Notes under the pieces: model-generated
The model's input: only the letters and a program-made list of their open reading frames with translations
Databases searched by the model: none
What the model was told of the DNA's origin: nothing
Virus record (IMG/VR): IMGVR_UViG_3300047445_000186
Coordinates: 124,001 to 188,000 of that record
Reading direction: 5' to 3' (one strand)
Length of the DNA: 64,000 nt
Made by a program: the position numbers and the translations under genes
Shown here: positions 22,907 through 35,250 of the stretch, one piece after another
Layout: every line of letters starts with the position of its first letter
How positions within the stretch are numbered: position 1 is the first letter of the stretch

Positions 22907-23794
22907 ATGATGTACTCATCAAAGTTTGCCGTCGCCATCAAGAACGCCGGCAAGATTCTCCGCGAAACGTCGAACTCAGATGCTTTCTCGGTCGCTCTCC
23001 CATTCGGTGCAGAGTATCAAATCCACCTGAAGAACATGAACTCGGTTCGAGCCTTGGTGAAGGTCGAAATCGATGGCGTTGACGCAACTGGCGGAACGCG
23101 ACTGATCGTGCCTGCAAATGGCGTGATTGACCTCGAGCGTTTCATCAAAGAGAACGATACGAACATCGGCAATCGGTTCAAGTTCATCGAGCGCTCTGCG
23201 AAGATCGAGAACGGTCCTCGCGGAATTCGCGTCGAAGACGGCCTGGTCCGAGTCGAGTTCGAATTTGAACGTGAACCTACGCCAATCAACGACCATCAGA
23301 TCCGTCACCAGCTCCTAACAGACACGTACTTCACGAAACATCTGGGCGGTTCGCTGAGCGGCCATGGGTACACGACCACGAATGCGATCGGCGACACCTG
23401 GCTGAACGGAGGGCCTCGCGGTCAGATCACCTATAGTGCTAACAGCGCTTCGGCATCCGGTGTCTCCGGCGTCGCCTCTGGGGCTCTGGGCAGTACTACG
23501 CATACCTTCACGCCATCTTCTGTGAAACAGGCGGCTTTCTCGGCACAAGTAAATGACGTCGGGATCACGGTTCCTGGCTCGATCTCTGAACAGAAGTTCG
23601 TCCAAGGCGCGTGGTTCCCAACTGACGGCGTGAAACACGTAATGGTGCTTAAGATCGTTGGCGAACTTCAGGGTAAGCTCGTCGAGGTCCCCGTTACCGT
23701 GAAGGCCAAACCAACATGCGTAACATGCGGCACGGTTAACAAAGGCAATGCTAAGTTCTGTCGCGAATGCGGCACAGCACTGACTGTCGTATAA
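22907..23794 (+). CDS. Hypothetical protein with C-terminal zinc ribbon
   Basis: CVTCG...AKFCRECG; TAAATA 22827. Confidence 0.7.
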   Translation: MMYSSKFAVAIKNAGKILRETSNSDAFSVALPFGAEYQIHLKNMNSVRALVKVEIDGVDATGGTRLIVPANGVIDLERFIKENDTNIGNRFKFIERSAKIENGPRGIRVEDGLVRVEFEFEREPTPINDHQIRHQLLTDTYFTKHLGGSLSGHGYTTTNAIGDTWLNGGPRGQITYSANSASASGVSGVASGALGSTTHTFTPSSVKQAAFSAQVNDVGITVPGSISEQKFVQGAWFPTDGVKHVMVLKIVGELQGKLVEVPVTVKAKPTCVTCGTVNKGNAKFCRECGTALTVV

Positions 23795-24343: not shown

Positions 24344-24402
24344 ACATGCGCGATTGGCATGTGCAACTCAAGTGCAAAACTCTCGTCTAGTTCATCATTC
24401 AC
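24142..24402 (-). CDS. Hypothetical protein
   Basis: ATGA-coupled to H-NS stop. Confidence 0.55.
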   Translation of the reverse strand: MNDELDESFALELHMPIAHVWLKIRKTYGQAQWTKMTNQEKIDLCVDFDQLTNHGYQRADRLLHRAVDLHGRQTVMSFLSRTIKLP

Positions 24403-24815
24403 GCTGCTTTGACGCGGAATTCTTCCTTGTCATGGCCAGCTTGAACAGCTTCCCGCAGCCAGCGTGGCGTACTCCCTCCACCCGACCACTTGTTCCCATT
24501 CTCGTCCGAGTACTTCACCGCCTTCGGAACTCCAGCGAGAGGTCCACGGTGAACCTTCTCCTTCCTCGACTTGCTGTGCACTGCTTGAGCGCGCTTTGAC
24601 ACGACCTTCTTCGCGGGTTTCTGCTTCGCGACTGCCTTGACCTTCTTGAGCGACACACCATCTGCAGCGTACAGATCGGCCGCGGTGATGCTGTACACGG
24701 CGATTGCTTCGCGAATGCGCTTGATCACGCCATCAGCTTCGCGCTGACGCATTGCGTTCGCTTTGTCTTGGAGCGCAGCTATTTGCGCCATCAATGCTTC
24801 GTACGATCTTGCCAT
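24399..24815 (-). CDS. hns: H-NS family nucleoid-associated protein (Burkholderiales type)
   Basis: SYEALMAQIAALQ..IREAIAVYSITAADL..KYSDENGNKWSGGGSTPRWL; SD GAGGAG. Confidence 0.88.
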   Translation of the reverse strand: MARSYEALMAQIAALQDKANAMRQREADGVIKRIREAIAVYSITAADLYAADGVSLKKVKAVAKQKPAKKVVSKRAQAVHSKSRKEKVHRGPLAGVPKAVKYSDENGNKWSGGGSTPRWLREAVQAGHDKEEFRVKAA

Positions 24816-24825
24816 TCTTTGCTCC

Positions 24826-25188
24826 TCAGATTTGCTTCAACCATTCACGGATTTTCTGGCCGTCAGATTCGACGTTCGCCAGAATGCGGCCGATCAAGGC
24901 CTTGTCGCGCTCATTGAACGTGACACAGTTAACCTTCAGAGCATGCAGCAAATTCGCGCAGTACCCCTCAGTGATGTACAGAGCCCACGCAAGTTCGCGT
25001 TGTCTGAGTTGTTCAAATGATTTGGCTGGGTGATTCTGCTTGGCTCCAAGTCCGTTCAGATAGTTCGTCAAGACTCTGGCAGGCGGCTTTGGCGTCTTAT
25101 TCCGCTCTCGTACTATTGACTCGAAGTCGATGATTTTGGCGGTACGTGGCTTCATTGCGGGCCGTCTTTTCGGTGCAGCTGCTGGCAT
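24826..25188 (-). CDS. Hypothetical protein
   Basis: SD AGGAGG on - strand. Confidence 0.65.
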   Translation of the reverse strand: MPAAAPKRRPAMKPRTAKIIDFESIVRERNKTPKPPARVLTNYLNGLGAKQNHPAKSFEQLRQRELAWALYITEGYCANLLHALKVNCVTFNERDKALIGRILANVESDGQKIREWLKQI

Positions 25189-25328
25189 GTATCCTCCTAG
25201 AGGTTGGGCGATTTAATAAAAAGTGTCCTGAATTAGGACACGTGTTCATTTTAATTCGTGAACCTGAGTCCGACTCCTTGTTACCTTCGTTACGAAGTGG
25301 AACAATTAAATAGACCGGAGGTCATGAT

Positions 25329-25874
25329 ATGAAATACTGGTCGCGCGTGCATTTGCCGAATTACGAAGAAGGTGCAGCGAAAATTATGGAGTGGGTCGAG
25401 CAGCGGAGATACACCAAGAACGGACACTTCTGGAACCACGTTGGAGCGACAGTGCTAAGGGCGCTCGCTCCTGGACTGTTCGAAGATTTGAAGCCATATG
25501 GTGTCGTCACGTACGCAGCAATTCTCGTCTCCCCTCCAGGCCTGATGAACATTCACATCGATGACGAAGCAACGAATCTCGGTGTTCAAGCTCGTATTCA
25601 GATTCCACTGAAGAACACTGCTGGTACCGAGACCCGTTTTTACTCAATTGAGCACGCAGTTCCTATCAAGACTCCAACCACGAATGGTCTGCACTTCTGG
25701 CGGTACGATGAGGAGCAGTGCGAGCAAGTTGACATGGTCAGCGTGACTGAGCCGACCATTCTCCGAATCAGCGCGCCGCACGCAGTTTACGTGCCGCCAA
25801 ATGCGCCGAAGCGATACGCCTTGACTCTCCGCCTTACCAATGATCCAGTGAGATACCTAGATGAGCACTCCTAA
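25329..25874 (+). CDS. 2OG-Fe(II)/cupin oxygenase-like protein
   Basis: HID...PHAV...R; TAAATA 25307, SD GGAGG. Confidence 0.7.
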   Translation: MKYWSRVHLPNYEEGAAKIMEWVEQRRYTKNGHFWNHVGATVLRALAPGLFEDLKPYGVVTYAAILVSPPGLMNIHIDDEATNLGVQARIQIPLKNTAGTETRFYSIEHAVPIKTPTTNGLHFWRYDEEQCEQVDMVSVTEPTILRISAPHAVYVPPNAPKRYALTLRLTNDPVRYLDEHS

Positions 25875-26484
25875 AAACATTTCAAGCCTGTTCAAAATCG
25901 AATGGGACAAAGTTATCAGTCAAGTTCAAGAAATCTCGAAGCTCGAGAAGGTTAGTTTCACTGGTGGTGGATGGGGAGGCTGGAGCCTGACGTCAAACAC
26001 CGGGAAGTTCGCCGATGGTTGGGAAGCCGGTCAGCTCGCGTTCAAGCGCGACGAGGACGGGAACATCTACAAGGATGAAGAGCTTGCCAAGAAGCTTGGC
26101 GTTCAAAAGCACGGTGCCCATAACAAATACACCGAGATCGCCACGCCAGAGTTGATGTCGTGCGTTCAGCAGGTTGCGAAGTACGGTCTCAGACCTGATC
26201 GTGCCAGAATTACGCAGCTCTCTCCGACTCAACACGCGCAATGGCACACAGATGGAACGCCGGAGATCGACACATTCCGCGTGCACTTCGTATTTGAGAC
26301 GAACCCCGAGGCGTTCTTCTATACTCAGGCCGGAACATTCCATCTTGAAGCACGGCAAGTGTACATGGTGAAGGTGAATGATCTGCACAAGGTCGAGAAC
26401 CTTGGTGAGACAAAGCGAACCCATCTGATCATGGACATCTTCGCTCCACGGGCAAAGTACTTCTACTATGTTGCCGCCCTATAA
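25861..26484 (+). CDS. Asp/Asn beta-hydroxylase-like 2OG-Fe(II) oxygenase
   Basis: WHTD..RVHF..TNP..LHKVENLGETKRTHLIMD. Confidence 0.75.
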   Translation: MSTPKNISSLFKIEWDKVISQVQEISKLEKVSFTGGGWGGWSLTSNTGKFADGWEAGQLAFKRDEDGNIYKDEELAKKLGVQKHGAHNKYTEIATPELMSCVQQVAKYGLRPDRARITQLSPTQHAQWHTDGTPEIDTFRVHFVFETNPEAFFYTQAGTFHLEARQVYMVKVNDLHKVENLGETKRTHLIMDIFAPRAKYFYYVAAL

Positions 26485-27055
26485 GTCACTCGACTTCAAG
26501 TTGTTGTCTGATGAGGCGATCAAGAAGATCGCTGATTTTGTTCTGGCAAAGCCTGAAGTAATCCAATCACACGTGTCTACCGTGACTGGTAAGTACGATG
26601 GGATCAGCTATCCGAAGCCACAAGCATTGACGGCGATCTTGGGGCTGATCAGAGCCGAGTACAAGATCATCCGTGAATCTTGCACGCTGCCATTCGAACC
26701 GTCTCTGATTTACTGCAAGCCAGGCACTGTCGTTCAGCGCCATGCCGACGGAAAGAAGTCAACTCGGATGTGCACGATCATTACGCCGATCCATCCATTG
26801 ACTGAGTACGCGCCAACAATGTTCTGGCAGAGCTGGAACGCGAGATCACCACGCGCGGTGCTTACGATTGATAAGCTCCCTGCACTCGTGAACATCCAAG
26901 AGCTGCACAGTCTGACGAACGGCTCTGAGCCTCGATTCAACTTCCAACTCGGCTTTGGCGAACCGTACGAGGTCGTTCTTGACTTACTTCAGCGGGGTGA
27001 GTTGTTCAAGAAGCTCGGTGAACGTGCAAGTCCACTTGTCTCTGAACTGAATTGA
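26468..27055 (+). CDS. 2OG-Fe(II)/cupin oxygenase-like protein
   Basis: HAD...LHSLTN..RFNFQ. Confidence 0.7.
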   Translation: MLPPYKSLDFKLLSDEAIKKIADFVLAKPEVIQSHVSTVTGKYDGISYPKPQALTAILGLIRAEYKIIRESCTLPFEPSLIYCKPGTVVQRHADGKKSTRMCTIITPIHPLTEYAPTMFWQSWNARSPRAVLTIDKLPALVNIQELHSLTNGSEPRFNFQLGFGEPYEVVLDLLQRGELFKKLGERASPLVSELN

Positions 27056-27916
27056 TCGAGCCTCAAGCAGGGGCGTGTGATTCCGATGGTACAGAACTGG
27101 AACCATCTCAGCACCAGTGAACTTCATTCGATTGGCAAGCTCAGGCCAATACTTCTTGTACACTTTGTACTTCACGTACCTTGAGTTCTCGAAGATTTTC
27201 GTGGCGATCTTGTCTTCACCCATAGCGAGTCGTTCAATTAATGGCTCGCGCATCATCGACAGAACAATCTCAGGCGTGTGCTCAAAGAATCCGAGTCCAC
27301 CGAGAATACCTTCGGAGATTGCATATCGATACCAAGCGAGAATGTGCTCGAGCTGAACGTACTTCCATTCAGTGCCGAACTTCTCGAGGTACATGTCACC
27401 GTTCCCCATCACTGGCAGACCGTTCCACTCGTTCCAAATCACATTCATGAGCTTCATGTGTGGAACCATGCCGAACGTATCAGCCTGAGATTGAGTGAAC
27501 ATCGTCCGAGCTTCATTCGTCACGATCCAATTCTCGATCGTGATCATGTAGTACTCGGGATTCAGATTCATGCTCTTGCAGAACTGTTCAACATACGCGA
27601 TCTCATGAACGTTCTTGTCTTGCGTGAATCTGAACGTGGCGATCTTGAACGGCACGTCGGCCTCAATGAACGCCTTCACGACTACTTCGCTGTCCATGCC
27701 GCCACTGAGCATCACAACTGGAATCCGACCGAGGCTCTTTGCCTGTTCGCTCAGGAGCTTTGCAACGTTCACGCACTCTTCACGGAATGTACCAGGTTCG
27801 CGAGTGCAACGAGAGAACGAACATTGCAAGGTGTTCTCAGCGATCTTATCGTTCGGGTTGAACAGCCCGCCCTCGTATCCGAACTGAACGTGATCATCAA
27901 GTGTAAAGGGTAGCAT
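26984..27916 (-). CDS. PP-loop adenine nucleotide alpha-hydrolase (Asn-synthase-like)
   Basis: VMLSGGMDSE; TAAATA on - strand at 27944-27949. Confidence 0.7.
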   Translation of the reverse strand: MLPFTLDDHVQFGYEGGLFNPNDKIAENTLQCSFSRCTREPGTFREECVNVAKLLSEQAKSLGRIPVVMLSGGMDSEVVVKAFIEADVPFKIATFRFTQDKNVHEIAYVEQFCKSMNLNPEYYMITIENWIVTNEARTMFTQSQADTFGMVPHMKLMNVIWNEWNGLPVMGNGDMYLEKFGTEWKYVQLEHILAWYRYAISEGILGGLGFFEHTPEIVLSMMREPLIERLAMGEDKIATKIFENSRYVKYKVYKKYWPELANRMKFTGAEMVPVLYHRNHTPLLEARSIQFRDKWTCTFTELLEQLTPLK

Positions 27917-27961
27917 TTTGGAATCGGTAAATACTCGAGCAAATATTTAGAAGTGCCCTCG

Positions 27962-28519
27962 ATGTCAAAGTACTCCAAGAATCTCGTGATCCCTTTCGAA
28001 CTCGATCTGTTCCCTTCAGTGAAGGCTTCAGGTGAAGGAGCGCCACTGGACAAGCTTGGTCACTTCAAGTACGACAAGAGCTCGCTGCCGCAAGAGCTGA
28101 TTGAGTTCATGCGCGAGCGTGATCTACAACCAGGACATTGTGAGGTGTTCTACACTCCGCCTGGCGCGTCACTGCCGATTCACGTTGATGGCGAGAAGCT
28201 CTCTAATTTGGCGAAGATCAATTGGTGCTACGGCGGACCAGGGAGCATGATGACTTGGTACAAGCTTCTCGTGCCTGAATCAGAGGTTGAACAGAAGCAA
28301 ACTGGTCTTGAGACCAGCTATCTGATTCCGTCGTTCAAGCAGTGCCGAATGATTCACTCTGCGAAGATCGGGTTGCCTACTCTCGTGAACGTTGGAGTGC
28401 CGCATGCCGTGATCAATCCTTCACGTGTCGGACGATGGGTGCTTAGCGTAGTGCCGTACGACCTGCAATTAGGCAGCAATCTGTCATTCGACGTTGCTCT
28501 GGAGCGGCTCAGCCGATAA
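27962..28519 (+). CDS. 2OG-Fe(II)/cupin oxygenase-like protein
   Basis: IHVD...PHAVIN..R; TAAATA 27928. Confidence 0.7.
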   Translation: MSKYSKNLVIPFELDLFPSVKASGEGAPLDKLGHFKYDKSSLPQELIEFMRERDLQPGHCEVFYTPPGASLPIHVDGEKLSNLAKINWCYGGPGSMMTWYKLLVPESEVEQKQTGLETSYLIPSFKQCRMIHSAKIGLPTLVNVGVPHAVINPSRVGRWVLSVVPYDLQLGSNLSFDVALERLSR

Positions 28520-29264
28520 ACTCTGGGAGCGCTTTCTTACTGAGGTGTGCGAGATTACCGTACTTCTGAACAGAGCGCTCGAGCAGATCTTCGCACTTCT
28601 CCAAATTCATCGTGGCTCGAGTGAAGATCATCAAGATCTTGATGTGATCGTCGTGATAGGAACTGCCATGCTTTGCTCGCACGTTGTTCCAACCGAATAC
28701 GTTCGTGTCTGTCCGCGCCAGTGGCAGAATTGGATTTGAATTGCTCGCACCAGGAACGCATTGGCGAATGAACAACGTCTCTCTTGGGTTGTTGTCGTAC
28801 AGCATGATTCGGAAGCTGGACGGCATGTCTTCCCATGGAGACTGATCACGATGAAGACCAACTGGTCGTTCACTTGACCATAGCGAGAACTCAGGCTCTC
28901 CATCAAATGGAAGCGCCTTGATGCCTTCTGCAATCTCAGGGAATTCAGTCAGAACATCGTGCTTGTTCTGCTCCCAGATATCGTCAAGCTGATTCGGAGA
29001 GTTCACACTCAAGAACGTTCGGTCTGCTTTGTACGCATCACCCGCAACGTCAGCTCGGACCTTGTTCACGGTTTTTGCGCGCTCAAGGAACCACGACAAG
29101 AACAGCTCAGGATCGTTCGGCTTGATTGATGGAATATCAAGCGGAAGGTACATGTACTTCCCGTACTTGTGCTCAAGAAGACCGAGCTTGATCCGCTGGC
29201 CCTTGTACCTCTTGTCGAGATACGCGTTCCGCCATTCAATGATGTTCTGTCGTTCAGTGCTCAT
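28509..29264 (-). CDS. Oxygenase-like protein (HxD...H)
   Basis: LHRD...KHGS; TAAATA-N4-ATG on - strand. Confidence 0.6.
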   Translation of the reverse strand: MSTERQNIIEWRNAYLDKRYKGQRIKLGLLEHKYGKYMYLPLDIPSIKPNDPELFLSWFLERAKTVNKVRADVAGDAYKADRTFLSVNSPNQLDDIWEQNKHDVLTEFPEIAEGIKALPFDGEPEFSLWSSERPVGLHRDQSPWEDMPSSFRIMLYDNNPRETLFIRQCVPGASNSNPILPLARTDTNVFGWNNVRAKHGSSYHDDHIKILMIFTRATMNLEKCEDLLERSVQKYGNLAHLSKKALPEFIG

Positions 29265-29300
29265 GGGTTATTTAGCCTAGCCGCGCCCCGTAAATATCAG

Positions 29301-29888
29301 ATGAAAGCACGCCAAACTACCATTGCAGATCGTCCCCAGATTGAAGCGATCGTGAAGTCTAACCCGAAGATGTACGGAGCTGACATCACTCGGTATCACA
29401 GCATCACGATCCATCGATTCGTTGGGCACGTGGTTGGCGATCTGGCGAAGACTGCATGGTGTGTCGAAGACGACGAGGGTCAGATCGTCGGACTGGCGAT
29501 TCAGTTCTGGTGGACCTCAATGCCGGCCTGGTCGATTGCCTCTCTGTTCTTCAAGAATGAACCTGGCAAGAATCAGTTCAACGCGCACAAGATTGGCGCC
29601 GTCCTGGTGAATGCGATGTGCAAAGAAGCCGAATCCCGAAAGATGTACGACTTCTACTACGTAGTAAGAGATAATGAATCTCTTCGTAAGAACATGAGCT
29701 TGAGCGTGAACGACGAATTCACGGAGAGGTACGAGATCAACGATCTGTTCCTGCTGCATCCGTACACTTCGCCGATCTACCCGATGTTCAAGAACATGCT
29801 CGGACACGTAATTGGGCGGAACCGCAAACCAGTGGTTTTCCGCCTTGCATCGCTTAAGAGCAAATATAGGCCGTCTGTATGGGTGTGA
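29301..29888 (+). CDS. GNAT-like fold protein
   Basis: VEDDEGQIVG...KIGAVLVNAMCKEAE; TAAATA-N4-ATG. Confidence 0.5.
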   Translation: MKARQTTIADRPQIEAIVKSNPKMYGADITRYHSITIHRFVGHVVGDLAKTAWCVEDDEGQIVGLAIQFWWTSMPAWSIASLFFKNEPGKNQFNAHKIGAVLVNAMCKEAESRKMYDFYYVVRDNESLRKNMSLSVNDEFTERYEINDLFLLHPYTSPIYPMFKNMLGHVIGRNRKPVVFRLASLKSKYRPSVWV

Positions 29889-31333
29889 ACGTTCTGATCT
29901 TCACTTGCGTCTCTGGACGATTGTTCCAGCGCGCGATTGGAGCGTACCAGGTTGCTGGGTTTCTGCGGCAGCATGGGTACTCAGTGCAGGTCGTTGACTT
30001 CACAGACAACTTCACTGAACAGGAATTGAAGAAGGCCGTCGATCTTTACGTCGACGAGACAACCCTCGCTGTCGGCGTTTCAACCACGTTCTACAGTCAT
30101 CTCGAAAACAAGTTCATCGCCGCGAAGAAGACCTTCGACGCGATCATTCCACAGGAACTTGAGAACGCGATCGTGTACTCGAAGGAGAAATTCCCGAAAG
30201 TAAAGATCGTTTTCGGTGGTTCGCGATCACTGGCAGGCGAGGCAATGCCTTGGGTTGACATGGTCATTCACGGGTACGGTGAAGACAAGTTCCTGACGTA
30301 CTTGGATGGTCTGTCTGGGCGCGCACCAAAGATCTTCTCGATCGGCAAGCCCTTGCGCGTGATCATGGACGATCCGCCGAAGAAGCGATTCGACATCCAA
30401 GAGCTGAGCCATCAGTTCGCGCCACAGGACTTCGTTCTACCTGGTGAAACGCTCCCGATTGAAATCAGCCGTGGCTGTATCTTCAAGTGCAAGTTCTGCG
30501 CGTACCCGCTGAATGGCAAGAAGAAGATGGACTTCCTTCGTTCCGCTCAGTGCGTTCAGGAAGAGCTGTTGCACAACTACGAGAAGTACGGAACCACGTC
30601 GTACTTTATCGGCGACGACACGTTCAACGACAGCACATTCAAGCTAGAGGCATTGCACAAGGTAATCACCGAGCTGCCGTTCAAGCCGAAGTTCACGTGC
30701 TATCTGCGACTCGATCTGCTGTACGCTCATCGCGAACAGATCCAGCTCCTCGATGAGATGGGTCTTGCTTCACCGTTCTTTGGGATCGAATCGCTGAATC
30801 AAAAGTCAGCCACCTCGATCGGCAAGGGCATGAAGACTGGCAAGGTCAAGGATTTCCTACTCGAGCTCTATCACGATCACTGGCGCGGAGAGAAGCCATT
30901 CACGTGCTCGTTCATTGTCGGTCTGCCGCATGAGACCCGTGAAACCGTTCAAGAGACATTTGAGTGGGTGAAGAAGACTGAACTGAGCTCGACGTTCTTT
31001 CCGCTGAGCATCTCAATCAAGTCGTTCTACCAGTCCGAGTTCAATCGGAACTACAAGGATTACGGGTACGATCTGAAGGATCCAGAGACCGGGTACTGGG
31101 AGAGTGAGAATTTCACGCTCGATTCGGCCACTGAGATTGCCGAGCAGTTCAACAAAGAGCTGATGTACACGAACGATCGGCCGAGCTCTTGGTTCCTGAT
31201 GACGATGCTGAATCACGGGATGACCCTTGAAGAGGCACGAAAGGTCTTGGTGAAGGACCTGCCTTGGCCGAAGATTCTGCGGACAAAGCGGGACAAGGTC
31301 GCCGAGTACAAAAAGCTTGTTCTGCAGAGCTAA
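29879..31333 (+). CDS. Cobalamin-binding radical SAM enzyme (class B methyltransferase-like)
   Basis: N-terminal B12-binding-like domain; SRGCIFKCKFC; GIES; IVGLPHET. Confidence 0.88.
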   Translation: MGVNVLIFTCVSGRLFQRAIGAYQVAGFLRQHGYSVQVVDFTDNFTEQELKKAVDLYVDETTLAVGVSTTFYSHLENKFIAAKKTFDAIIPQELENAIVYSKEKFPKVKIVFGGSRSLAGEAMPWVDMVIHGYGEDKFLTYLDGLSGRAPKIFSIGKPLRVIMDDPPKKRFDIQELSHQFAPQDFVLPGETLPIEISRGCIFKCKFCAYPLNGKKKMDFLRSAQCVQEELLHNYEKYGTTSYFIGDDTFNDSTFKLEALHKVITELPFKPKFTCYLRLDLLYAHREQIQLLDEMGLASPFFGIESLNQKSATSIGKGMKTGKVKDFLLELYHDHWRGEKPFTCSFIVGLPHETRETVQETFEWVKKTELSSTFFPLSISIKSFYQSEFNRNYKDYGYDLKDPETGYWESENFTLDSATEIAEQFNKELMYTNDRPSSWFLMTMLNHGMTLEEARKVLVKDLPWPKILRTKRDKVAEYKKLVLQS

Positions 31334-31358
31334 ATATCCGGTTAAACTTGGAAGACTC

Positions 31359-31667
31359 ATGCACAAAGTTACCTACAAATACACGCATCCGACAGATGCC
31401 ACTGGCCTGATCTCGATGACGACAGAGGAACTCGCGTACCGCGACACGTTCCTGACATGGGCGTATCAGAACGGCCTCGTTGCAACAGAGACCAGCATTG
31501 TCGACACAAAGACGATCATGCACGAAGTTCTGTGGAGCAACAAGATCGCGTTCGACGCTTTCCGTGGTCACTTCGGTCAAGAGTACCACACGTTCGTTGA
31601 TAACATCCTCGCTCAAGTTGAAGCGAAGGGTGGCTCGCACGAACTGATCGAAGCTGACATCGCCTAA
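31359..31667 (+). CDS. Small hypothetical late protein
   Basis: TAAATA 31331. Confidence 0.6.
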   Translation: MHKVTYKYTHPTDATGLISMTTEELAYRDTFLTWAYQNGLVATETSIVDTKTIMHEVLWSNKIAFDAFRGHFGQEYHTFVDNILAQVEAKGGSHELIEADIA

Positions 31668-32374
31668 TGCTGTCACTGGATGAAGCTCAACGGGCGCTGA
31701 TTCTCAAGAAGCTTGCGCCCCTAGGACGTGTACCTCGGTACGATGCGGAGGCGCAGACCGTCACGCTCTCCGAGACATCAGCACGTCGCTTCATCATTGA
31801 TGGGACCGCGTGCACCCAGCGGCCGCGTTCAATCGCGCTCCAGGACCCAAAGGCGTACGATCCGTCTTATCTCGGATTTGGTATTCACGAAGCCCTCAGT
31901 GTTCTGATCCAAGACGACTACGCACTGTACGCGACTCTGTTCGACACCGTCAGACAGATCGATTCGACAGCAAGCACAATGTTCGGTTCATGCGAGCAGG
32001 CGGCGTTGATTCTGTCGCATAATTCATTCGGTGAAGAGCTGTTCCCGCATGTTCATGCCAGATCGATGATGGACACGCAGACTCTGTCGCTGTTCGTGAA
32101 TTTGACTGGGACTGACTCAGCAACCCTGACGCTATTCGATCCGGTCACTGAAGACTCACGAGTGTTCAAGAACGGATACACCGATCATCGCGTTGTTGCG
32201 GTGCACGCTCGGAAAGCCGATCAGCGTGAAATCAAGATCGAACACGGGTCATTCATCCTGTTCGACGCTGCGAAGACACCACACAAGTTCTCGTACAGCG
32301 ACGACATCTGGCTCACGTTCGTGTACGATCACGTCAATGGAGTCAGAGAAGATGTTCGCGCCAACTCCCTTTAA
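31667..32374 (+). CDS. Cupin/oxygenase-like protein
   Basis: PHVH...LFDAAKTPH. Confidence 0.55.
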   Translation: MLSLDEAQRALILKKLAPLGRVPRYDAEAQTVTLSETSARRFIIDGTACTQRPRSIALQDPKAYDPSYLGFGIHEALSVLIQDDYALYATLFDTVRQIDSTASTMFGSCEQAALILSHNSFGEELFPHVHARSMMDTQTLSLFVNLTGTDSATLTLFDPVTEDSRVFKNGYTDHRVVAVHARKADQREIKIEHGSFILFDAAKTPHKFSYSDDIWLTFVYDHVNGVREDVRANSL

Positions 32375-33107
32375 GATCCTTTTCGTTCAGCTCCTGGCAT
32401 GGATCGGTATTCCGGTCCTGCTTTGGTATGGTTCATGGGTGCACATCATCGGCGCCCTGCTGATGTACACACTGTACGGTGGTGCTGGAGTTTCACTGAC
32501 GTTCCATCGGATCCTGTCGCACGCTGCGTTCAAGTTGAATCCAATTGTGCGGAAGATCATGATCACGCTTGCGAGCTTCGCGAACGTCGGATCACCAATC
32601 ACCTGGGTTGCCGTACATCGAGCGCACCATCGGTTCGTTGACACTGAACGCGATCCGCATTCACCACATCACATGCCGTTCTGGTACATGATGTTCGGCA
32701 CGATGTACTCACAAGTCTCGGTGAAGTTCACTGTCGATCTGCTTCGTGATCCATTCTGTAGGTTCATCCATAAATACTACTTCGCAGTTCAGCTTCCATG
32801 GATCGTTCTGCTGTTCTTGCTTGGCGGGTGGAAAGCCGTTCTTGCGTTCCATCTCGTTCCAGGCGGAATGACATGGCTTGGCGGATCGCTCGTGAACTAC
32901 TTGAATCATCTACATGGGTACAAACCATTCGACGGTCAGGGAACTAGCACGAACAATCTGATCACTGGATTCTTGGTGTTCGGAGAAGGTTGGCACAACA
33001 TGCATCACGCGAAGCCGACCACACCGACTACGAAGCTGAATTGGTGGGAGTTCGATTTGGTTTACCAGATCGGCAGACTGATTGGAACACCAAGGGGCAA
33101 GAGATGA
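32352..33107 (+). CDS. Acyl-lipid/acyl-CoA delta-9-type fatty acid desaturase
   Basis: His boxes HRILSH, HRAHH..DPHSP, GEGWHNMHH; TM helices. Confidence 0.92.
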   Translation: MFAPTPFKILFVQLLAWIGIPVLLWYGSWVHIIGALLMYTLYGGAGVSLTFHRILSHAAFKLNPIVRKIMITLASFANVGSPITWVAVHRAHHRFVDTERDPHSPHHMPFWYMMFGTMYSQVSVKFTVDLLRDPFCRFIHKYYFAVQLPWIVLLFLLGGWKAVLAFHLVPGGMTWLGGSLVNYLNHLHGYKPFDGQGTSTNNLITGFLVFGEGWHNMHHAKPTTPTTKLNWWEFDLVYQIGRLIGTPRGKR

Positions 33108-33718
33108 TTTACTCAGTCGAGAACTGGGAGCTTGTTCAGCGTTTACGGGCTGACAAGCAGGCGTTGATGGATGAGTACACTGGCGCAGCGAACAGAACGC
33201 TGAACAAAGTGAACGCACTCACGAAGTCGAACAAGATGCTGTTCGATAAGCCGATGAGCGTGCTTCCATACATCTGGGATACTAGGCTCTGGACGGCCGA
33301 TGAAAAGATTGGTGCAAAGATCGACACAGTTGGTCTGCTTCAACCGCCGAACCCATTGCCAGTGGGGAACACGATCGTACAAGACTTCCCGTGCATTCGG
33401 CAATTCTTCTGGGCTTCACTGCTTCCAGGTGGAAAGATCAATCCGCACGTTGGCGTGAACGGCATTCTGTACAAGCGAATCCCTGATCATTACCGCATTC
33501 AAATCTGCTGGTTCCCAGGAACGGGCGCTGCATTTCACGTTCAAGATCGATTCATCGAGTACAAGGAAGATGCGTGCTTCGGCTTCGAAGACGGTAATGA
33601 GCTTCACTGGGTCGAGCATCATGGCGATCAAATCAGAACCACTCTCATTCTTGATGTGTGGCGTGATCAAGTACCTGCGCTGCGCGCACCTCATCCAGAT
33701 GCTGTTCTCAAAAGTTGA
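33104..33718 (+). CDS. Asp/Asn beta-hydroxylase (LpxO-like) oxygenase
   Basis: LLPGGKINPHVG...LHWVEHHGDQIRTTLILD. Confidence 0.75.
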   Translation: MIYSVENWELVQRLRADKQALMDEYTGAANRTLNKVNALTKSNKMLFDKPMSVLPYIWDTRLWTADEKIGAKIDTVGLLQPPNPLPVGNTIVQDFPCIRQFFWASLLPGGKINPHVGVNGILYKRIPDHYRIQICWFPGTGAAFHVQDRFIEYKEDACFGFEDGNELHWVEHHGDQIRTTLILDVWRDQVPALRAPHPDAVLKS

Positions 33719-34205
33719 TCTGGACATCTCGTTCACGAAGCAGGCACGTCGTGGAAAGTACGTGCTTAGCTACGGGCCGATCCATTACTACACCGTTCTC
33801 GGTAATCCATTCCCGTTCAAACTGATCAAGGCCTGGAAGCCGGACCTTGTGCGTTGGGTTGAGATCACTGGCACGCAACCAGCTGGTCCGCATCGTGATC
33901 ATGGGATTACGACCACGTTGAATTGCTACATGGATGCTCCGTCTGGCGAGACGAAATTCTGGCGTGAAGGCGCGAACAGTGCTCCATTCCGTGTAAAGGG
34001 CGCCGTGACATCGAACGGGTACGTGCAAAGCACACTGGATTTTGTTGATTCATTCAAGGCGTTCACGGGTGACGCGTACCTGCTGAACGTGTCTGAAATC
34101 CACTCGGTTGAGAAGGAAATCGACGTCAATCGGCGGTTCATCCAGCTCTCTTGGAACACCGTACCGTTCGACCAGGTTCTGAAGCTCGTTCAAACGCCGT
34201 TGTAG
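33699..34205 (+). CDS. 2OG-Fe(II)/cupin oxygenase-like protein
   Basis: PHRD...LLNVSEIHSV...R. Confidence 0.7.
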   Translation: MLFSKVDLDISFTKQARRGKYVLSYGPIHYYTVLGNPFPFKLIKAWKPDLVRWVEITGTQPAGPHRDHGITTTLNCYMDAPSGETKFWREGANSAPFRVKGAVTSNGYVQSTLDFVDSFKAFTGDAYLLNVSEIHSVEKEIDVNRRFIQLSWNTVPFDQVLKLVQTPL

Positions 34206-34221
34206 TAAAATTGGTTCCATC

Positions 34222-35250
34222 ATGGAACCGAAACTTCTGACACGCGATGCCTTCCGAGAAGGTGTGTTCGCACGGGACAAGCACAAGTGCGTGTTCTGCA
34301 GCGAGCCTGCTCAGGACGCGCATCACATTCTCGAGCGCCGTCTTTGGCCTGATGGCGGGTACTACCTCGAGAACGGCGCGTCTGTTTGCGGTGAGCACCA
34401 CATTCTGTGCGAGCAGACTGTCATTTCGGTCGAGCAAGTTCGCGATGCATGTGGCATTCGCCAACCGCACGTTCCTCCGCATTTCTACCCAGATCACCAG
34501 TACGACAAGTGGGGCAACCCTCTGCTCGATGGTGGCAAGCGCGGTCGTGGTGAACTGTTCTTCGACGAGTCAGTCCAGAAGGTCCTTGGCCAAGGTGGCG
34601 TGCTCGATCTGTTCACGTTGTACGCGAAGTACGGACGGACGTTCCATCTGCCATGGTCTCCTGGCATTCACGACGATGACAAGGCGCTGAAGGACTGCAC
34701 ACAGTTCGAAGGTAAGCGCGTGATCATGTCGCTGAAAGCCGATGGTGAGAACACCACTGGGTACTCGGACGGGCACATTCATGCTCGCTCGATTGACAGC
34801 CGAGGCGGTGAAGATCGCGCTTGGGTGAAGCAATTCCTGTCTGAGAACGTGTGCTACAACTTGCCTGAAGGCTGGCGAATCTGCGGTGAAAATCTGTGGG
34901 CCGAGCACTCGATCAAGTACAGCGACTTGAAATCGTACTTCTACGGCTTCAGCCTGTGGAATGAACGGAACGTCTGCCTCTCGTGGGACGAGACGATCGA
35001 GTATTTCGCTCTGTTAAACGTCACTCCAGTCGACGTGCTCTATGACGGTATCTGGGACGAGGCTGCGATCAGGAAAATCGAGAAGACGCTTGATCTTGAG
35101 AAGGTTGAAGGGTACGTGATCCGACTCGCTGAAGCGTACCCGTACAGCCAATTCAAGAGCTCGATCGCGAAGTTCGTCCGACCCGGGCACGTACAGACAT
35201 CTAAGCATTGGCGGGCAGGTAGCCGCTTCACACCGAACAAACTAGCATGA
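34222..35250 (+). CDS. HNH-like domain fused to ATP-dependent RNA ligase
   Basis: N-term CVFC..DAHH..C..HH; C-term KADGEN (motif I), ICGEN, EGYVIR, AKFVR. Confidence 0.85.
   Translation: MEPKLLTRDAFREGVFARDKHKCVFCSEPAQDAHHILERRLWPDGGYYLENGASVCGEHHILCEQTVISVEQVRDACGIRQPHVPPHFYPDHQYDKWGNPLLDGGKRGRGELFFDESVQKVLGQGGVLDLFTLYAKYGRTFHLPWSPGIHDDDKALKDCTQFEGKRVIMSLKADGENTTGYSDGHIHARSIDSRGGEDRAWVKQFLSENVCYNLPEGWRICGENLWAEHSIKYSDLKSYFYGFSLWNERNVCLSWDETIEYFALLNVTPVDVLYDGIWDEAAIRKIEKTLDLEKVEGYVIRLAEAYPYSQFKSSIAKFVRPGHVQTSKHWRAGSRFTPNKLA

What the first reader, a model, noticed from the sequence alone, without database searches (positions are those of the whole stretch)
25329..34205. 9-kb late-expressed tailoring cluster: eight His-x-Asp/His oxygenase-like genes, B12 radical SAM, PP-loop enzyme, GNAT-like protein, desaturase
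Seen: oxygenase-like ORFs at 25329, 25861, 26468, 27962, 28509(-), 31667, 33104 and 33699, with more at 2048 and 53161. They are interleaved with a cobalamin radical SAM enzyme, an SGGxDS ATP pyrophosphatase and a membrane desaturase. Six TAAATA cores occur here, including two closely spaced pairs on opposite strands. I found no obvious precursor peptide or carrier protein. Inference: late timing argues against DNA-precursor synthesis and favours modification of virion proteins or glycans, or remodelling of host lipids/lipid A (LpxO-like enzyme plus desaturase). The substrate is unknown.
Basis: partly seen in the sequence, partly recalled or inferred. Interest (0 to 1): 0.68.

Follow-up and report, generated by a model that had tools for sequence, protein, structure and literature searches.

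The report
Late phage oxygenase–amide-synthetase island
A 9-kb block of a 332-kb soil phage genome really does hold a swarm of small iron/2-oxoglutarate hydroxylases, an asparagine-synthetase-like enzyme, a B12 radical-SAM enzyme and a lipid desaturase. The same gene set recurs in dozens of uncultured phages, which points to an undescribed, late-made pathway that most likely alters lipids of the host envelope.

Summary
The region carries 13 tightly packed genes. Seven of the eight "oxygenase-like" ORFs are supported as AspH-type Fe/2OG double-stranded beta-helix enzymes; the eighth (31667) is inconclusive.

- The "PP-loop enzyme" is not QueC-like. It is a stand-alone AsnB-type synthetase domain without a glutaminase domain (VIA-align Z 16 to asparagine synthetase).
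- The B12 radical-SAM enzyme and a Δ9-type membrane desaturase are confirmed. The GNAT call is weak.
- TAAATA is a real promoter-like element: 21 in the window against 4.5 expected. It sits upstream of sheath, adaptor and tail-fibre genes and keeps its position in a relative with about 50% protein identity. No RNA data exist, so late timing is inferred.
- The cluster is co-inherited. One relative keeps g03–g14 in the same order.
- The AsnB-like family occurs in 79 IMG/VR loci. It travels with AspH-like paralogs (50 of 85 loci analysed), desaturases (39), the g07 family (32), B12 radical-SAM enzymes (18) and fatty-acid hydroxylases (14). It was not found in 50,697 GenBank phage records and almost never in bacterial genomes.

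Best reading (about 0.4): a late-expressed module that tailors a lipid-anchored envelope component. Rivals are Asp/Asn modification of proteins, a pathway-less accessory island, and a soluble metabolite or sugar pathway. The substrate remains unknown.

The parts
22907..23794 (+). Left conserved flank: Zn-ribbon/DUF7577 protein that borders the island in all relatives
   Evidence: Pfam zinc-ribbon/DUF7577 hits. Orthologs at 46-48% in L005, L016 and L018. The same flank is present in the 351-kb contig and in L103.
25223..25241 (.). Bidirectional hairpin with T-runs on both strands; likely the left transcriptional boundary of the island
   Evidence: Terminator-like site reported on both strands.
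25307..25312 (+). TAAATA promoter-like core, 17 nt before the g01 start, followed by GGAGG
25329..25874 (+). g01: small Fe/2OG DSBH, paralog of g05 (HID...H...R)
   Evidence: g05-family HMM E 6e-8. Viral cluster c27 at 2.8e-34. Ortholog at 37% in L016.
25861..26484 (+). g02: AspH-type hydroxylase (PF05118; HTD...H...R)
   Evidence: Pfam 9.7e-10, 39 bits against a 22.6-bit cut-off. Cluster c1 at 1e-25.
26468..27055 (+). g03: divergent DSBH paralog (HAD...H...R); overlaps g04 convergently by 72 nt
   Evidence: Iterated HMM E 1.3e-3 in a 502-protein database. Clusters c26/c27 at about 3e-5. Orthologs in L016 (38%) and L103 (31%).
26984..27916 (-). g04: stand-alone AsnB-type synthetase (PP-loop SGGMDSE) with no glutaminase domain
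   Evidence: AF2 pLDDT 90. VIA-align: human ASNS Z 16.0, E. coli AsnB 15.5, beta-lactam synthetase 13.1, carbapenam synthetase 12.0, QueC only 8.1. Invariant residues in the 20-sequence alignment A2.
27928..27949 (.). Divergent pair of TAAATA cores: 27928 (+) towards g05 and 27944 (-) towards g04
   Evidence: The same divergent pair sits between the orthologs in L103.
27962..28519 (+). g05: Fe/2OG DSBH oxygenase (HVD...H...R); conserved neighbour of g04
   Evidence: Alignment A1 invariants H74, D76, H148, R158. AF2 pLDDT 93. VIA-align Z 9-10.6 to 2OG oxygenases including AspH. Lies next to the PP-loop gene in L005, L018, L103 and the 351-kb contig.
28509..29264 (-). g06: 251-aa DSBH-like protein (HRD...H), a family of its own (c28)
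   Evidence: ESM Atlas structure matches Fe/2OG families at TM 0.52-0.62. Orthologs at 39-54% in L005, L018 and L103. No profile link to the g05 family.
29269..29296 (.). Divergent pair of TAAATA cores: 29269 (-) is 5 nt before the g06 ATG; 29291 (+) is 5 nt before the g07 ATG
   Evidence: The pair is conserved in L103, where the + site reads TATAAATA.
29301..29888 (+). g07: member of the c21/U4 family, the commonest immediate neighbour of the AsnB-like gene in other phages; possibly a GNAT fold
   Evidence: Cluster c21 at 2.6e-21 and U4 at 4e-6. c21 and U4 are linked by hhalign at 98.6%. It is the immediate neighbour for 31 of 99 PP-loop genes. GNAT hints only: HaaN E 3.9e-4 and PDB 3g8w E 0.036.
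29879..31333 (+). g08: class-B (B12-binding) radical-SAM enzyme with CIFKCKFC cluster motif
   Evidence: PF04055 at 2.8e-15 and PF02310 at 8.8e-6. All NCBIfam hits are B12 radical-SAM families, all far under their cut-offs. It is the only radical-SAM gene in the genome. 78% ortholog in L103. Cluster c5 occurs in 18 loci.
31331..31336 (+). TAAATA core overlapping the g08 stop codon, 23 nt before g09
   Evidence: Conserved position in L103.
31359..31667 (+). g09: 102-aa protein of unknown function
   Evidence: 46% ortholog in L103 at the same position. No family hit.
31667..32374 (+). g10: 235-aa protein with conserved PH[VI]HARS and TPHK motifs; DSBH status inconclusive
   Evidence: 53% ortholog in L103. 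WelO5 E 0.06. Low-confidence Atlas model with 2OG/JmjC matches at TM 0.5-0.59. No profile link.
32337..33107 (+). g11: membrane Δ9-type acyl-lipid/acyl-CoA desaturase
   Evidence: PF00487 at 5e-18. His boxes HRILSH, HRAHH and HNMHH. Two hydrophobic hairpins. 69% ortholog in L103. Cluster c2 occurs in 39 loci.
33104..33718 (+). g12: AspH-type hydroxylase (PF05118) with a PHVG...H two-His motif
   Evidence: Pfam 1e-8, 35.6 bits against a 22.6-bit cut-off. phrog_25472. 51% ortholog in L103.
33699..34205 (+). g13: DSBH paralog (HRD...H...R), cluster c59
   Evidence: Iterated HMM E 3.6e-3. c59 at 5.5e-40. c59 is linked to c26 by hhalign at 97.3%. Orthologs in L016 (47%) and in two copies in L103.
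34222..35250 (+). Right conserved flank: HNH + RNA ligase fusion that borders the island in relatives
   Evidence: PF09414 at 8e-22. phrog_24030 at 4.5e-137. 62% identity to Ralstonia phage RsoM2USA, whose neighbourhood lacks the island.

Best explanation
The region is one instance of a conserved accessory module that is nearly restricted to phages.

**Components.**
- A stand-alone AsnB-type synthetase (g04). It should adenylate a carboxylate with ATP and pass it to an amine.
- Its frequent partner, the g07 family.
- A radiation of small soluble AspH-type Fe(II)/2OG hydroxylases: g01, g02, g03, g05, g06, g12, g13 and perhaps g10.
- A Δ9 membrane desaturase (g11).
- A B12 radical-SAM enzyme (g08).

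**Expression.** It appears to be transcribed as about six short units from TAAATA promoter cores. These resemble T4-type late promoters and also precede virion genes.

**Most likely function.** The enzymes tailor a lipid-anchored component of the infected cell's envelope late in infection. Candidates are membrane acyl lipids, an amino-lipid or lipid A. The predicted steps are desaturation, hydroxylation and possibly methylation of acyl chains, plus formation or amidation of a carboxylate-bearing head group.

**Shown.** Gene content, folds, catalytic motifs, promoter-motif enrichment, co-inheritance and distribution.

**Inferred.** Late timing, the lipid substrate, and that the enzymes act on one substrate.
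For: **Folds and motifs.**
- g04 is AsnB-like: Z 16.0 and 15.5, against 8.1 for QueC.
- DSBH enzymes carry an intact HxD...H...R set.
- The desaturase has Δ9-type His boxes and is the only membrane protein in the cluster.
- The radical-SAM enzyme has its cluster motif and B12 domain.

**Co-inheritance.**
- L103 keeps g03-g14 in order at 31-78% identity.
- L016, L018, L005 and a 351-kb contig keep subsets between the same flanks. The 351-kb contig carries a P450 and no called desaturase.

**Wider module.** Among 85 loci holding a relative of g04:
- DSBH superfamily in 50, FA_desaturase in 39 (up to 6 copies), g07 family in 32, B12 radical-SAM in 18, FA_hydroxylase in 14.
- A co-directional order AspH>U3>PP>U4>DES recurs in L033, L034, L039, L045 and L070.
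- The 27 loci with only distant PP-loop relatives, several of them QueC-type, carry none of these families. That serves as an internal control.

**Same genome.** A second g05-type DSBH overlaps a second desaturase-like gene at G000:192051-193356.

**Expression.**
- TAAATA: 21 in the window against 4.5 expected.
- 56 of 89 genome copies are intergenic.
- The motif precedes sheath, adaptor and fibre genes.
- Positions are conserved in L103.
- There are no sigma-70-like sites.

**Literature.** In pelagimyophages, AspH-like genes are core, and radical-SAM cassettes sit with LPS genes in the variable host-recognition cluster (PMC7029224). Cyanophage desaturases are published auxiliary genes (PMC5776448).
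Against: - No substrate is shown.
- None of the DSBH proteins has a membrane anchor. None matches NCBIfam LpxO-type models.
- The canonical substrates of AsnB and AspH are Asp/Asn, which fits proteins or peptides as well as lipid head groups.
- No acyl carrier protein, OlsB-type or PlsC-type acyltransferase was found. PF00550 and PF13444 found nothing relevant, and PlsC was not searched.
- The GNAT assignment of g07 is weak.
- The island varies in content and is split into separate transcription units on both strands, as expected for independently acting accessory genes.
- In some phages the AsnB-like gene sits directly after tail-fibre genes (L043, L046, L050).
- Timing is untested because no RNA runs exist.
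Confidence: 0.4

Rival explanations
1. Protein or peptide tailoring. The AspH-type hydroxylases β-hydroxylate Asp/Asn residues. The AsnB-type synthetase amidates or cross-links Asp/Glu side chains, as lasso-peptide cyclases and β-lactam synthetases do chemically (from memory). The B12 radical-SAM enzyme C-methylates residues. The target would be virion proteins (tail fibres), host proteins or an unrecognised RiPP-like precursor. The desaturase would then be an unrelated passenger.
For: - The canonical chemistry of both core families centres on Asp/Asn: structural matches to AsnB, β-lactam synthetase and carbapenam synthetase, and to AspH.
- The B12 radical-SAM enzyme also resembles RiPP and methyl-coenzyme M reductase C-methyltransferases. 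g07 has a weak hit to a RiPP N-acetyltransferase.
- The promoter type is shared with virion genes.
- In L043, L046 and L050 the AsnB-like gene directly follows tail-fibre-like genes.
- The second g05 paralog lies about 4 kb from tail-fibre genes.
- All DSBH proteins are soluble.
Against: - No precursor peptide, RiPP recognition element, protease or carrier was found.
- It does not explain why membrane desaturases and fatty-acid hydroxylases are the next most frequent partners (39 and 14 of 85 loci). Nor does it explain why a desaturase sits inside the same co-directional operon.
- The DSBH proteins lack substrate-docking domains such as the TPR region I recall for AspH.
Confidence: 0.25
2. There is no common pathway. 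The region is a hypervariable accessory island in which a small DSBH family has expanded by duplication, and unrelated auxiliary genes (desaturase, radical-SAM, AsnB-like) have accumulated. Each has its own promoter and its own target.
For: - About six separate promoter cores lie on both strands.
- Gene content differs between relatives lying between the same two flanks. RsoM2USA lacks the island altogether.
- Paralog numbers vary widely: up to 9 DSBH genes, 6 desaturases or 7 PP-loop genes per locus.
- DSBH paralogs are also scattered elsewhere in the genome.
- The pelagimyophage literature describes similar hypervariable regions.
Against: - The same families recur with AsnB-like proteins that are only about 25% identical.
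- Tight, start/stop-overlapping operons exist: PP>c21, and AspH>U3>PP>U4>DES.
- The loci with distant PP-loop relatives, several of them QueC-type, lack all of the partner families.
Confidence: 0.2
3. Biosynthesis of a soluble small molecule or unusual sugar, for example a modified amino or uronic acid for glycan decoration. The AsnB-like enzyme would amidate a sugar or acid carboxylate, and the oxygenases and radical-SAM enzyme would tailor it.
For: - In L043, L046 and L050 the module also carries a class-III aminotransferase-like gene, an aldehyde-dehydrogenase-like gene and two B12 radical-SAM genes.
- The best structural matches of g05 include sugar- and nucleoside-tailoring oxygenases: 7v4p, EvdMO1 and AviO1.
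- g04 has a weak hit to an exopolysaccharide-system amidotransferase.
- LPS genes lie in comparable islands of pelagimyophages.
Against: - No sugar-nucleotide enzymes or glycosyltransferases were seen among the scanned genes of the island.
- No PEP mutase is present, so a phosphonate route is unlikely.
- Integral-membrane desaturases and hydroxylases point to hydrophobic substrates.
Confidence: 0.1
4. Nucleic-acid modification: 7-deazaguanine or another base, or tRNA modification. The PP-loop enzyme would act as QueC or TilS and the DSBH enzymes as AlkB/TET-like oxygenases.
For: - Weak QueC and TilS PP-loop hits.
- An RNA ligase gene lies next door.
- AlkB-family structures appear among the g05 matches at Z 8-9.
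Against: - g04 is structurally AsnB-like: Z 16, against 8.1 for QueC and 8.3-8.4 for TilS.
- It has no conserved QueC-type Cys cluster.
- The genome has no TGT/DpdA.
- True QueC-type loci, which sit next to QueD, form a separate group lacking the partner families.
- The DSBH signature is PF05118-like, not AlkB/TET.
- The late-type promoters fit precursor synthesis poorly.
Confidence: 0.05

Closest known systems
Asparagine synthetase B synthetase domain and its offshoots (β-lactam synthetase, carbapenam synthetase, TsnB9)
   Same: - SGGxDS PP-loop.
- The whole-domain fold aligns over about 260 residues, at Z 16.0, 15.5, 13.1, 12.0 and 11.1.
- The chemistry implied is ATP-dependent adenylation of a carboxylate followed by attack of an amine.
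   Different: - Only 310 aa, with no N-terminal glutaminase domain.
- Under Pfam's Asn_synthase cut-off: 16.4 bits against 21.
- The nearest structural clusters are five virus-only ones.
- The substrate and nitrogen donor are unknown.
Aspartyl/asparaginyl β-hydroxylase family (PF05118: AspH, LpxO, OlsC)
   Same: - DSBH fold, metal ligands, 2OG-binding Arg and the C-terminal signature around the second His.
- g12 has the His-x-Gly arrangement I recall for human AspH.
   Different: - Minimal proteins of 170-250 aa without the TPR domain of AspH or a membrane anchor as in LpxO.
- Only g02 and g12 reach the Pfam cut-off.
- No NCBIfam LpxO-type match.
- Eight or more paralogs lie in one locus.
Cyanophage and pelagiphage auxiliary genes: Δ9 lipid desaturases and AspH-like genes in hypervariable islands
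   Same: - Phage-borne Δ9-type desaturase (PMC5776448).
- AspH-like genes are core in pelagimyophages, and radical-SAM cassettes lie in the variable host-recognition cluster beside LPS genes (PMC7029224).
   Different: - Those papers treat the genes singly. They do not report the linkage with an AsnB-like synthetase, the g07/U3 families or the operon order.
- The present phage is a 332-kb rhizosphere phage related to RsoM2USA, SCTP-2 and CcrBL9.
Ornithine-lipid / lipid A tailoring enzymes (OlsB, OlsC, OlsE, LpxO), recalled from memory
   Same: The combination of families is similar: a possible GNAT-fold N-acyltransferase (g07?), PF05118 hydroxylases, and FA_hydroxylase (PF04116) in 14 related loci.
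   Different: - g07 does not match OlsB's Pfam family.
- No PlsC-type O-acyltransferase was seen among the scanned genes.
- An AsnB-like enzyme and a B12 radical-SAM enzyme are not part of the known pathway.
T4-type late promoters (TATAAATA, gp55-dependent)
   Same: - An A/T-rich -10-like core with no -35 element.
- It lies upstream of virion genes.
- One orthologous site in L103 reads TATAAATA exactly.
   Different: - The core here is TAAATA with a variable 5' flank. TATAAATA itself occurs 0 times in this genome.
- Several sites lie only 5 nt from the ATG.
- The sigma factor and the timing were not tested.

Membership tests
Fe(II)/2OG oxygenase, AspH-type (PF05118) | Double-stranded β-helix fold | tested here: met
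   - g05: AF2 pLDDT 93, with VIA-align Z 9-10.6 to 2OG oxygenases.
- g06: Atlas model at TM 0.52-0.62 to 2OG families.
- Not modelled for g01, g02, g03, g12 or g13.
Fe(II)/2OG oxygenase, AspH-type (PF05118) | HxD/E(or G)...H metal site plus a basic residue for the 2OG C5 carboxylate | tested here: met
   - H74, D76, H148 and R158 are invariant in the g05 family.
- The same columns are present in g01, g02, g03 and g13.
- g12 has HxG...H.
Fe(II)/2OG oxygenase, AspH-type (PF05118) | Score above Pfam's gathering threshold | tested here: inconclusive
   - Met for g02 (39 bits) and g12 (35.6 bits) against a 22.6-bit cut-off.
- Not met for g01, g03, g05, g06, g10 and g13. These are linked only by iterated HMMs or structure.
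Fe(II)/2OG oxygenase (for g10, 31667-32374) | Any significant sequence or confident structural link to DSBH oxygenases | tested here: inconclusive
   - WelO5 E 0.06.
- Atlas model pLDDT 0.47 with matches at TM 0.5-0.59.
- hhalign and PDB profile searches were negative.
QueC (7-cyano-7-deazaguanine synthase) | QueC-level similarity, a conserved Zn-binding Cys cluster, and pathway partners (TGT/DpdA, QueD, QueE) | tested here: not met
   - 19.9 bits against a cut-off of 150.3.
- Only C32 is near-invariant.
- Z 8.1 to QueC, against 16 to AsnB.
- No TGT in the genome.
- QueD and QueE were not searched separately.
Asparagine synthetase B family | C-terminal synthetase domain with PP-loop | tested here: met
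   SGGMDSE is invariant. 263-266 residues align to human ASNS and E. coli AsnB at Z 16.0 and 15.5.
Asparagine synthetase B family | N-terminal Ntn glutaminase domain | tested here: not met
   - The protein is 310 aa.
- The alignment starts at residue 119 of ASNS and residue 73 of AsnB.
- No GATase Pfam hit.
- Full-length bacterial AsnB clusters align over only part of their length.
Class B (cobalamin-dependent) radical SAM | CxxxCxxC cluster motif in a radical-SAM core, plus an N-terminal B12-binding domain | tested here: met
   - CIFKCKFC motif.
- PF04055 at 57.3 bits, over its cut-off. PF02310 at 26 bits, under its 32.1 cut-off, at residues 19-138.
- The best NCBIfam matches are B12 radical-SAM families (PhpK family 1e-24, ladderane-type 8e-21, HpnJ 8e-19). 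All are far under their cut-offs, so no subfamily is assigned.
Δ9 acyl-lipid/acyl-CoA desaturase (PF00487) | Three His boxes (HxxxxH, HxxHH, HxxHH) in a membrane protein with two hydrophobic hairpins | tested here: met
   - HRILSH, HRAHH and HNMHH.
- Hydrophobic segments at residues 58-91 and 198-223.
- PF00487 at 66 bits against a 29.7-bit cut-off.
- Regiospecificity is inferred from motif resemblance, from memory.
GNAT acyltransferase (for g07) | Significant match to a GNAT family or a GNAT fold | tested here: inconclusive
   - HaaN GNAT E 3.9e-4, 20 bits against a cut-off of 250.
- Family profile against PDB 3g8w at E 0.036, over 77 residues only. That 3g8w is a GNAT-fold protein is from memory; the entry is named only 'Lactococcal prophage ps3 protein 05'.
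- No Pfam hit in 19 members.
- No annotated homolog.
T4-type late promoter | Over-represented A/T-rich core at a fixed short distance upstream of late (virion) genes | tested here: met
   - 21 in the window against 4.5 expected.
- 56 of 89 copies are intergenic, and 39 lie within 60 nt of a start on the same strand (47 within 80 nt).
- It precedes sheath, adaptor, fibre and assembly genes.
- Positions are conserved in L103.
T4-type late promoter | Late timing and dependence on a gp55-like sigma factor | not tested
   No RNA run holds the phage. No gp55 search was made.
RiPP biosynthetic cluster | Precursor peptide and recognition/leader-processing components | tested here: not met
   - None was recognised among the ORFs.
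- g09 (102 aa) is conserved only in L103 and has no family.
- No carrier protein.
LpxO/OlsC lipid hydroxylases | Family-level match and membrane association | tested here: not met
   No NCBIfam family for g01, g02, g03, g05 or g06. No hydrophobic segment in any DSBH protein.

The most novel reading that the evidence does not exclude
Phages of several lineages carry a self-contained pathway that makes or rebuilds a lipid the host does not make.
- The virus-specific AsnB-type synthetase and its g07-family partner would join an acidic amino-acid-type head group to an acyl chain. The product would be an N-acyl-Asp/Asn-like amino-lipid or an amidated lipid A.
- The AspH-type hydroxylases, Δ9 desaturase(s), fatty-acid hydroxylase and B12 radical-SAM methylase would then diversify it.
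- This would be made late, to change the envelope before lysis. Possible benefits are blocking superinfection, preventing re-adsorption of progeny, or aiding lysis.
Probability: 0.12. Interest if true: 0.85.

Novelty: new variant of a known kind. Interest (0 to 1): 0.6.

Why it matters
Phage desaturases and "2OG oxygenase" genes are usually listed one by one as auxiliary genes of unknown purpose. Here they form a recurrent linked set around a virus-specific asparagine-synthetase-like enzyme. The set appears in at least 50 uncultured phage contigs from different lineages and carries late-type promoters.

That turns a vague annotation into a defined, testable module with a short core: AsnB-like, g07 family, U3, AspH-like and desaturase. 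If it remodels envelope lipids, it would be a new way for phages to manipulate the cell surface. It would also yield new enzyme chemistry: a glutaminase-less AsnB-type ligase and minimal AspH-type hydroxylases. If it instead modifies virion proteins, it would reveal enzymatic post-translational tailoring of tail fibres.

Tried and rejected
- **GenBank phage searches.** Megablast of the region and tblastn of g08, g04 and g05 against 50,697 GenBank phage records gave no match.
- **RsoM2USA.** Its neighbourhood shares only the RNA ligase.
- **PDB profile searches.** A1, A2, A3 and A6 gave nothing useful beyond generic PP-loop hits.
- **hhalign.** The g05 family against g06 and g10 was negative. 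g10 against all DSBH clusters was negative.
- **g10 relatives.** IMG/VR scans with g10 alone and with alignment A6 found none.
- **Complex prediction of g04 with g07.** The verdict was "no answer" (score 0.00). This is not evidence for or against binding.
- **Phosphonate idea.** It was prompted by the PhpK-family radical-SAM hit. No PEP mutase is in the genome.
- **7-deazaguanine idea.** There is no TGT, and g04 is not QueC-like.
- **Ornithine-lipid OlsB test for g07.** No PF13444 match at g07.
- **Carrier protein.** None found.
- **Expression data.** Nine rhizosphere DNA runs hold the sequence and no RNA run does.
- **Script.** A first phmmer all-against-all timed out and was replaced by blastp.

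Full report
**Source.** The window is bases 124001-188000 of a 331,776-bp IMG/VR virus record judged 94% complete. The same DNA is held by nine rhizosphere metagenome runs and by no RNA run. By the flanking HNH-RNA-ligase gene, the nearest named phages are Ralstonia phage RsoM2USA (62% aa), Salicola phage SCTP-2 (60%) and the Caulobacter phages CcrSC/CcrBL9 (54%). Neither the region nor its key proteins match any of 50,697 GenBank phage records.

**Gene map.**

| Gene | Coordinates | Strand |
|---|---|---|
| g01 | 25329-25874 | + |
| g02 | 25861-26484 | + |
| g03 | 26468-27055 | + |
| g04 | 26984-27916 | - |
| g05 | 27962-28519 | + |
| g06 | 28509-29264 | - |
| g07 | 29301-29888 | + |
| g08 | 29879-31333 | + |
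| g09 | 31359-31667 | + |
| g10 | 31667-32374 | + |
| g11 | 32337-33107 | + |
| g12 | 33104-33718 | + |
| g13 | 33699-34205 | + |

Neighbouring genes overlap start-to-stop within three co-directional blocks. The island lies between a Zn-ribbon/DUF7577 gene (22907-23794) and the RNA ligase (34222-35250).

**The oxygenase-like ORFs.**
- g02 and g12 pass Pfam's threshold for Asp_Arg_Hydrox.
- g05 has 11 metagenomic homologs with invariant H74, D76, H148 and R158.
  - Its AF2 model (pLDDT 93) matches only cupin/DSBH proteins in Foldseek.
  - In the exhaustive VIA-align search it matches Fe/2OG oxygenases at Z 9-10.6. These include a nucleoside-antibiotic hydroxylase, EvdMO1, AviO1, proline 3-hydroxylase and human AspH.
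- An HMM of the g05 family finds g01 (6e-8) and two further paralogs elsewhere in the genome.
  - After one iteration g03, g13 and g02 are the next hits, at 1e-3 to 1e-2 among 502 proteins.
  - After a second iteration the 53161 ORF reaches 0.014.
- The aligned proteins share hHxD ... NVxxxHxVxN ... R, which is the PF05118-type C-terminal signature.
- g06 has no sequence link. However, the ESM Atlas model of this very protein matches HalD, viral AspH, PhyH and AlkB clusters at TM 0.52-0.62.
- g10 remains open. It has two conserved His motifs, shared with its only known homolog in L103. Its Atlas model is poor and no profile link was found.
- In sum, seven of the eight are supported and one is inconclusive. 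g12 carries HxG rather than HxD/H.

**The PP-loop enzyme.**
- Sequence scans gave only weak QueC, TilS and Asn_synthase hits to the SGGMDSE loop.
- Twenty homologs of 306-358 aa align end to end at 26-53% identity to g04.
- The AF2 model (pLDDT 90) is closest to human asparagine synthetase (Z 16.0, 263 residues aligned) and E. coli AsnB (15.5). Next come β-lactam synthetase (13.1), carbapenam synthetase (12.0) and TsnB9 (11.1). LarE, NAD synthetases, TilS and QueC score at or below 10.
- g04 is therefore an AsnB-type synthetase domain that has lost the glutaminase domain.
- In the ESM Atlas its nearest structural neighbours are five virus-only clusters. Bacterial full-length AsnB follows.
- A pattern scan of 185,579 bacterial and archaeal genomes found only three short Bdellovibrio-like MAG contigs.

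**Other enzymes.**
- g08 has the CxxxCxxC motif, a radical-SAM core and an N-terminal B12-binding domain. It resembles PhpK-family, ladderane-type, HpnJ and RiPP C-methyltransferase models, all far below their cut-offs. It is the only radical-SAM gene in the genome.
- g11 has the three His boxes of Δ9-type desaturases. It is the only protein of the cluster with membrane segments.
- The GNAT idea for g07 rests on two weak hits. Nothing came from Pfam or from homolog annotation.

**TAAATA.**
- The window holds 21 copies against 4.5±1.8 in dinucleotide-preserving shuffles.
- Genome-wide there are 89 copies, more than any other permutation of the same letters.
  - 56 are intergenic, although only about 9% of the genome is intergenic.
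  - 39 lie within 60 nt upstream of a start codon on the same strand (47 within 80 nt).
- Of ten genes preceded by the motif elsewhere, six are virion genes: tail sheath, head-tail adaptor, two tail fibres, a structural protein and a tail-assembly protein.
- The finding region has seven copies, and six of them sit 5-30 nt before g01, g04, g05, g06, g07 and g09. The seventh (32771) lies inside g11.
- The two divergent pairs, and the site after the radical-SAM gene, recur at the same intergenic positions in L103. The flanking sequence there has diverged, and one site reads TATAAATA.
- The region has no sigma-70-like promoter, against 6.3±2.7 in shuffles.
- A T4-like late promoter is therefore a well-founded inference. 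Timing itself is untested.

**Co-inheritance.**
- L103, a 40.5-kb Logan contig, carries g03 to g14 in the same order and orientation at 31-78% identity. It adds a second PP-loop gene, a second radical-SAM gene and NifU/IscA-like genes.
- L016/L017, L018, L005 and a 351-kb ENA contig carry different subsets between the same two flanks. The 351-kb contig carries a P450 and no called desaturase. L018 has an APS-kinase-like gene.
- RsoM2USA lacks the island.

**A wider module.**
- A scan of IMG/VR with the g04 alignment returned 79 loci.
- I clustered 1,719 ORFs from 85 loci and annotated the commonest clusters. The families that travel with the AsnB-like gene are tallied below.

| Family | Loci (of 85) | Note |
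|---|---|---|
| DSBH superfamily | 50 | 110 copies |
| FA_desaturase | 39 | up to 6 copies per locus |
| g07 family (clusters c21 and U4) | 32 | immediate neighbour of 31 of 99 PP-loop genes, often with overlapping stop/start |
| U3, an unknown 204-aa family | 25 | |
| B12 radical-SAM of the g08 type | 18 | |
| FA_hydroxylase | 14 | |

- A co-directional order AspH>U3>PP>U4>DES recurs in L033, L034, L039, L045 and L070.
- The 27 loci with only distant PP-loop relatives carry none of these families, and several of them sit next to QueD. This serves as an internal control.
- In the present genome a second g05-type DSBH overlaps a second desaturase-like gene, 4 kb beyond the window.

**Mechanism.**
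- The shown facts are a carboxylate-adenylating amide synthetase, many intact Fe/2OG hydroxylases, a membrane Δ9 desaturase and a B12 radical-SAM enzyme. All are co-inherited and preceded by the promoter type of virion genes.
- The partners most often linked to them, apart from further DSBH proteins, are integral-membrane di-iron enzymes, plus a P450 in one relative. These act on hydrophobic substrates.
- The simplest single-substrate reading is therefore late tailoring of a lipid-anchored envelope component (about 0.4).
- The canonical Asp/Asn chemistry of AsnB and AspH, the soluble nature of the DSBH proteins and the tail-fibre neighbourhood in some phages keep protein or peptide tailoring alive (about 0.25).
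- The variable content and the multiple promoters keep "no common pathway" alive (about 0.2).
- A soluble metabolite or sugar pathway (about 0.1) and nucleic-acid modification (about 0.05) are less likely.

**Comparison with the literature.**
- Cyanophage Δ9 desaturases are described (PMC5776448), but without mention of oxygenase neighbours.
- Pelagimyophage genomes are reported to have a core AspH-like gene, a stearoyl-CoA desaturase in freshwater members, and radical-SAM cassettes with LPS genes in the variable host-recognition cluster (PMC7029224).
- Full-text searches found no paper that links these genes with an AsnB-like synthetase.
- The RsoM2USA paper reports no phage RNA polymerase and does not mention promoters (PMC8504454).

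**Verdict.**
- AsnB-like rather than generic PP-loop or QueC;
- seven TAAATA cores rather than six;
- g10 and the GNAT call left open.

The finding is best described as a new variant of phage accessory islands: a defined, recurrent, nearly phage-restricted enzyme module of unknown substrate.

Noticed in passing
G000:C1:192051-193356 (about 4 kb beyond the window end; locus L101:4051-5356): A second g05-type DSBH (E 5e-50 to the g05 family) overlaps the end of a second FA_desaturase-like gene (PF00487, 28.8 bits, just under the cut-off). The pair lies on the minus strand, about 4 kb from tail-fibre genes.
   Followed up: partly
window 24399-24815 (-): A protein with an H-NS C-terminal DNA-binding domain (PF00816, E 5e-10) lies in a minus-strand block just left of the island. 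This block is not conserved in relatives.
   Followed up: no
window 29264-29301; also G000:130034, 200625, 223032, 253805: Several TAAATA cores lie only 5-6 nt before the ATG. If they are -10-like elements, the transcripts would have almost no leader and no Shine-Dalgarno sequence.
   Followed up: no
L019, L020 (IMG/VR) and L058: Extreme paralog expansion next to the AsnB-like gene. L019 and L020 each carry five or six desaturase genes, and L058 carries seven PP-loop genes in a row.
   Followed up: no
L043, L046, L050 (IMG/VR): Here the AsnB-like gene directly follows tail-fibre-like genes. Beside it lie a class-III aminotransferase-like gene, an aldehyde-dehydrogenase-like gene, two B12 radical-SAM genes and DSBH genes. 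The layout resembles the pelagimyophage host-recognition cluster.
   Followed up: partly
L103:5555-6260 and L016:13097-13435: NifU_N and IscA-like Fe-S assembly genes sit beside the island in relatives. They may supply clusters for the radical-SAM enzyme. No such gene was seen among the scanned ORFs of the window's island.
   Followed up: no
L073, L089, L092 (IMG/VR): The most distant PP-loop hits sit next to a QueD-like gene and an aminotransferase-like gene. They look like true QueC-type deazaguanine loci and are a different system from the one in the window.
   Followed up: partly
window 24500-35500: There are no sigma-70-like promoter matches in 11 kb, against 6.3±2.7 in shuffles. Host-type promoters appear to be avoided in this region.
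   Followed up: no
window 34222-35250 (+): The RNA ligase carries an N-terminal HNH-like segment (residues about 9-65). It is conserved at 54-74% across RsoM2USA, SCTP-2, CcrBL9 and the metagenomic relatives.
   Followed up: no
G000:C1:99763-100932 (L015): A NadR-like nicotinamide-nucleotide adenylyltransferase/NUDIX fusion is also preceded by TAAATA. The motif is therefore not exclusive to virion genes.
   Followed up: no
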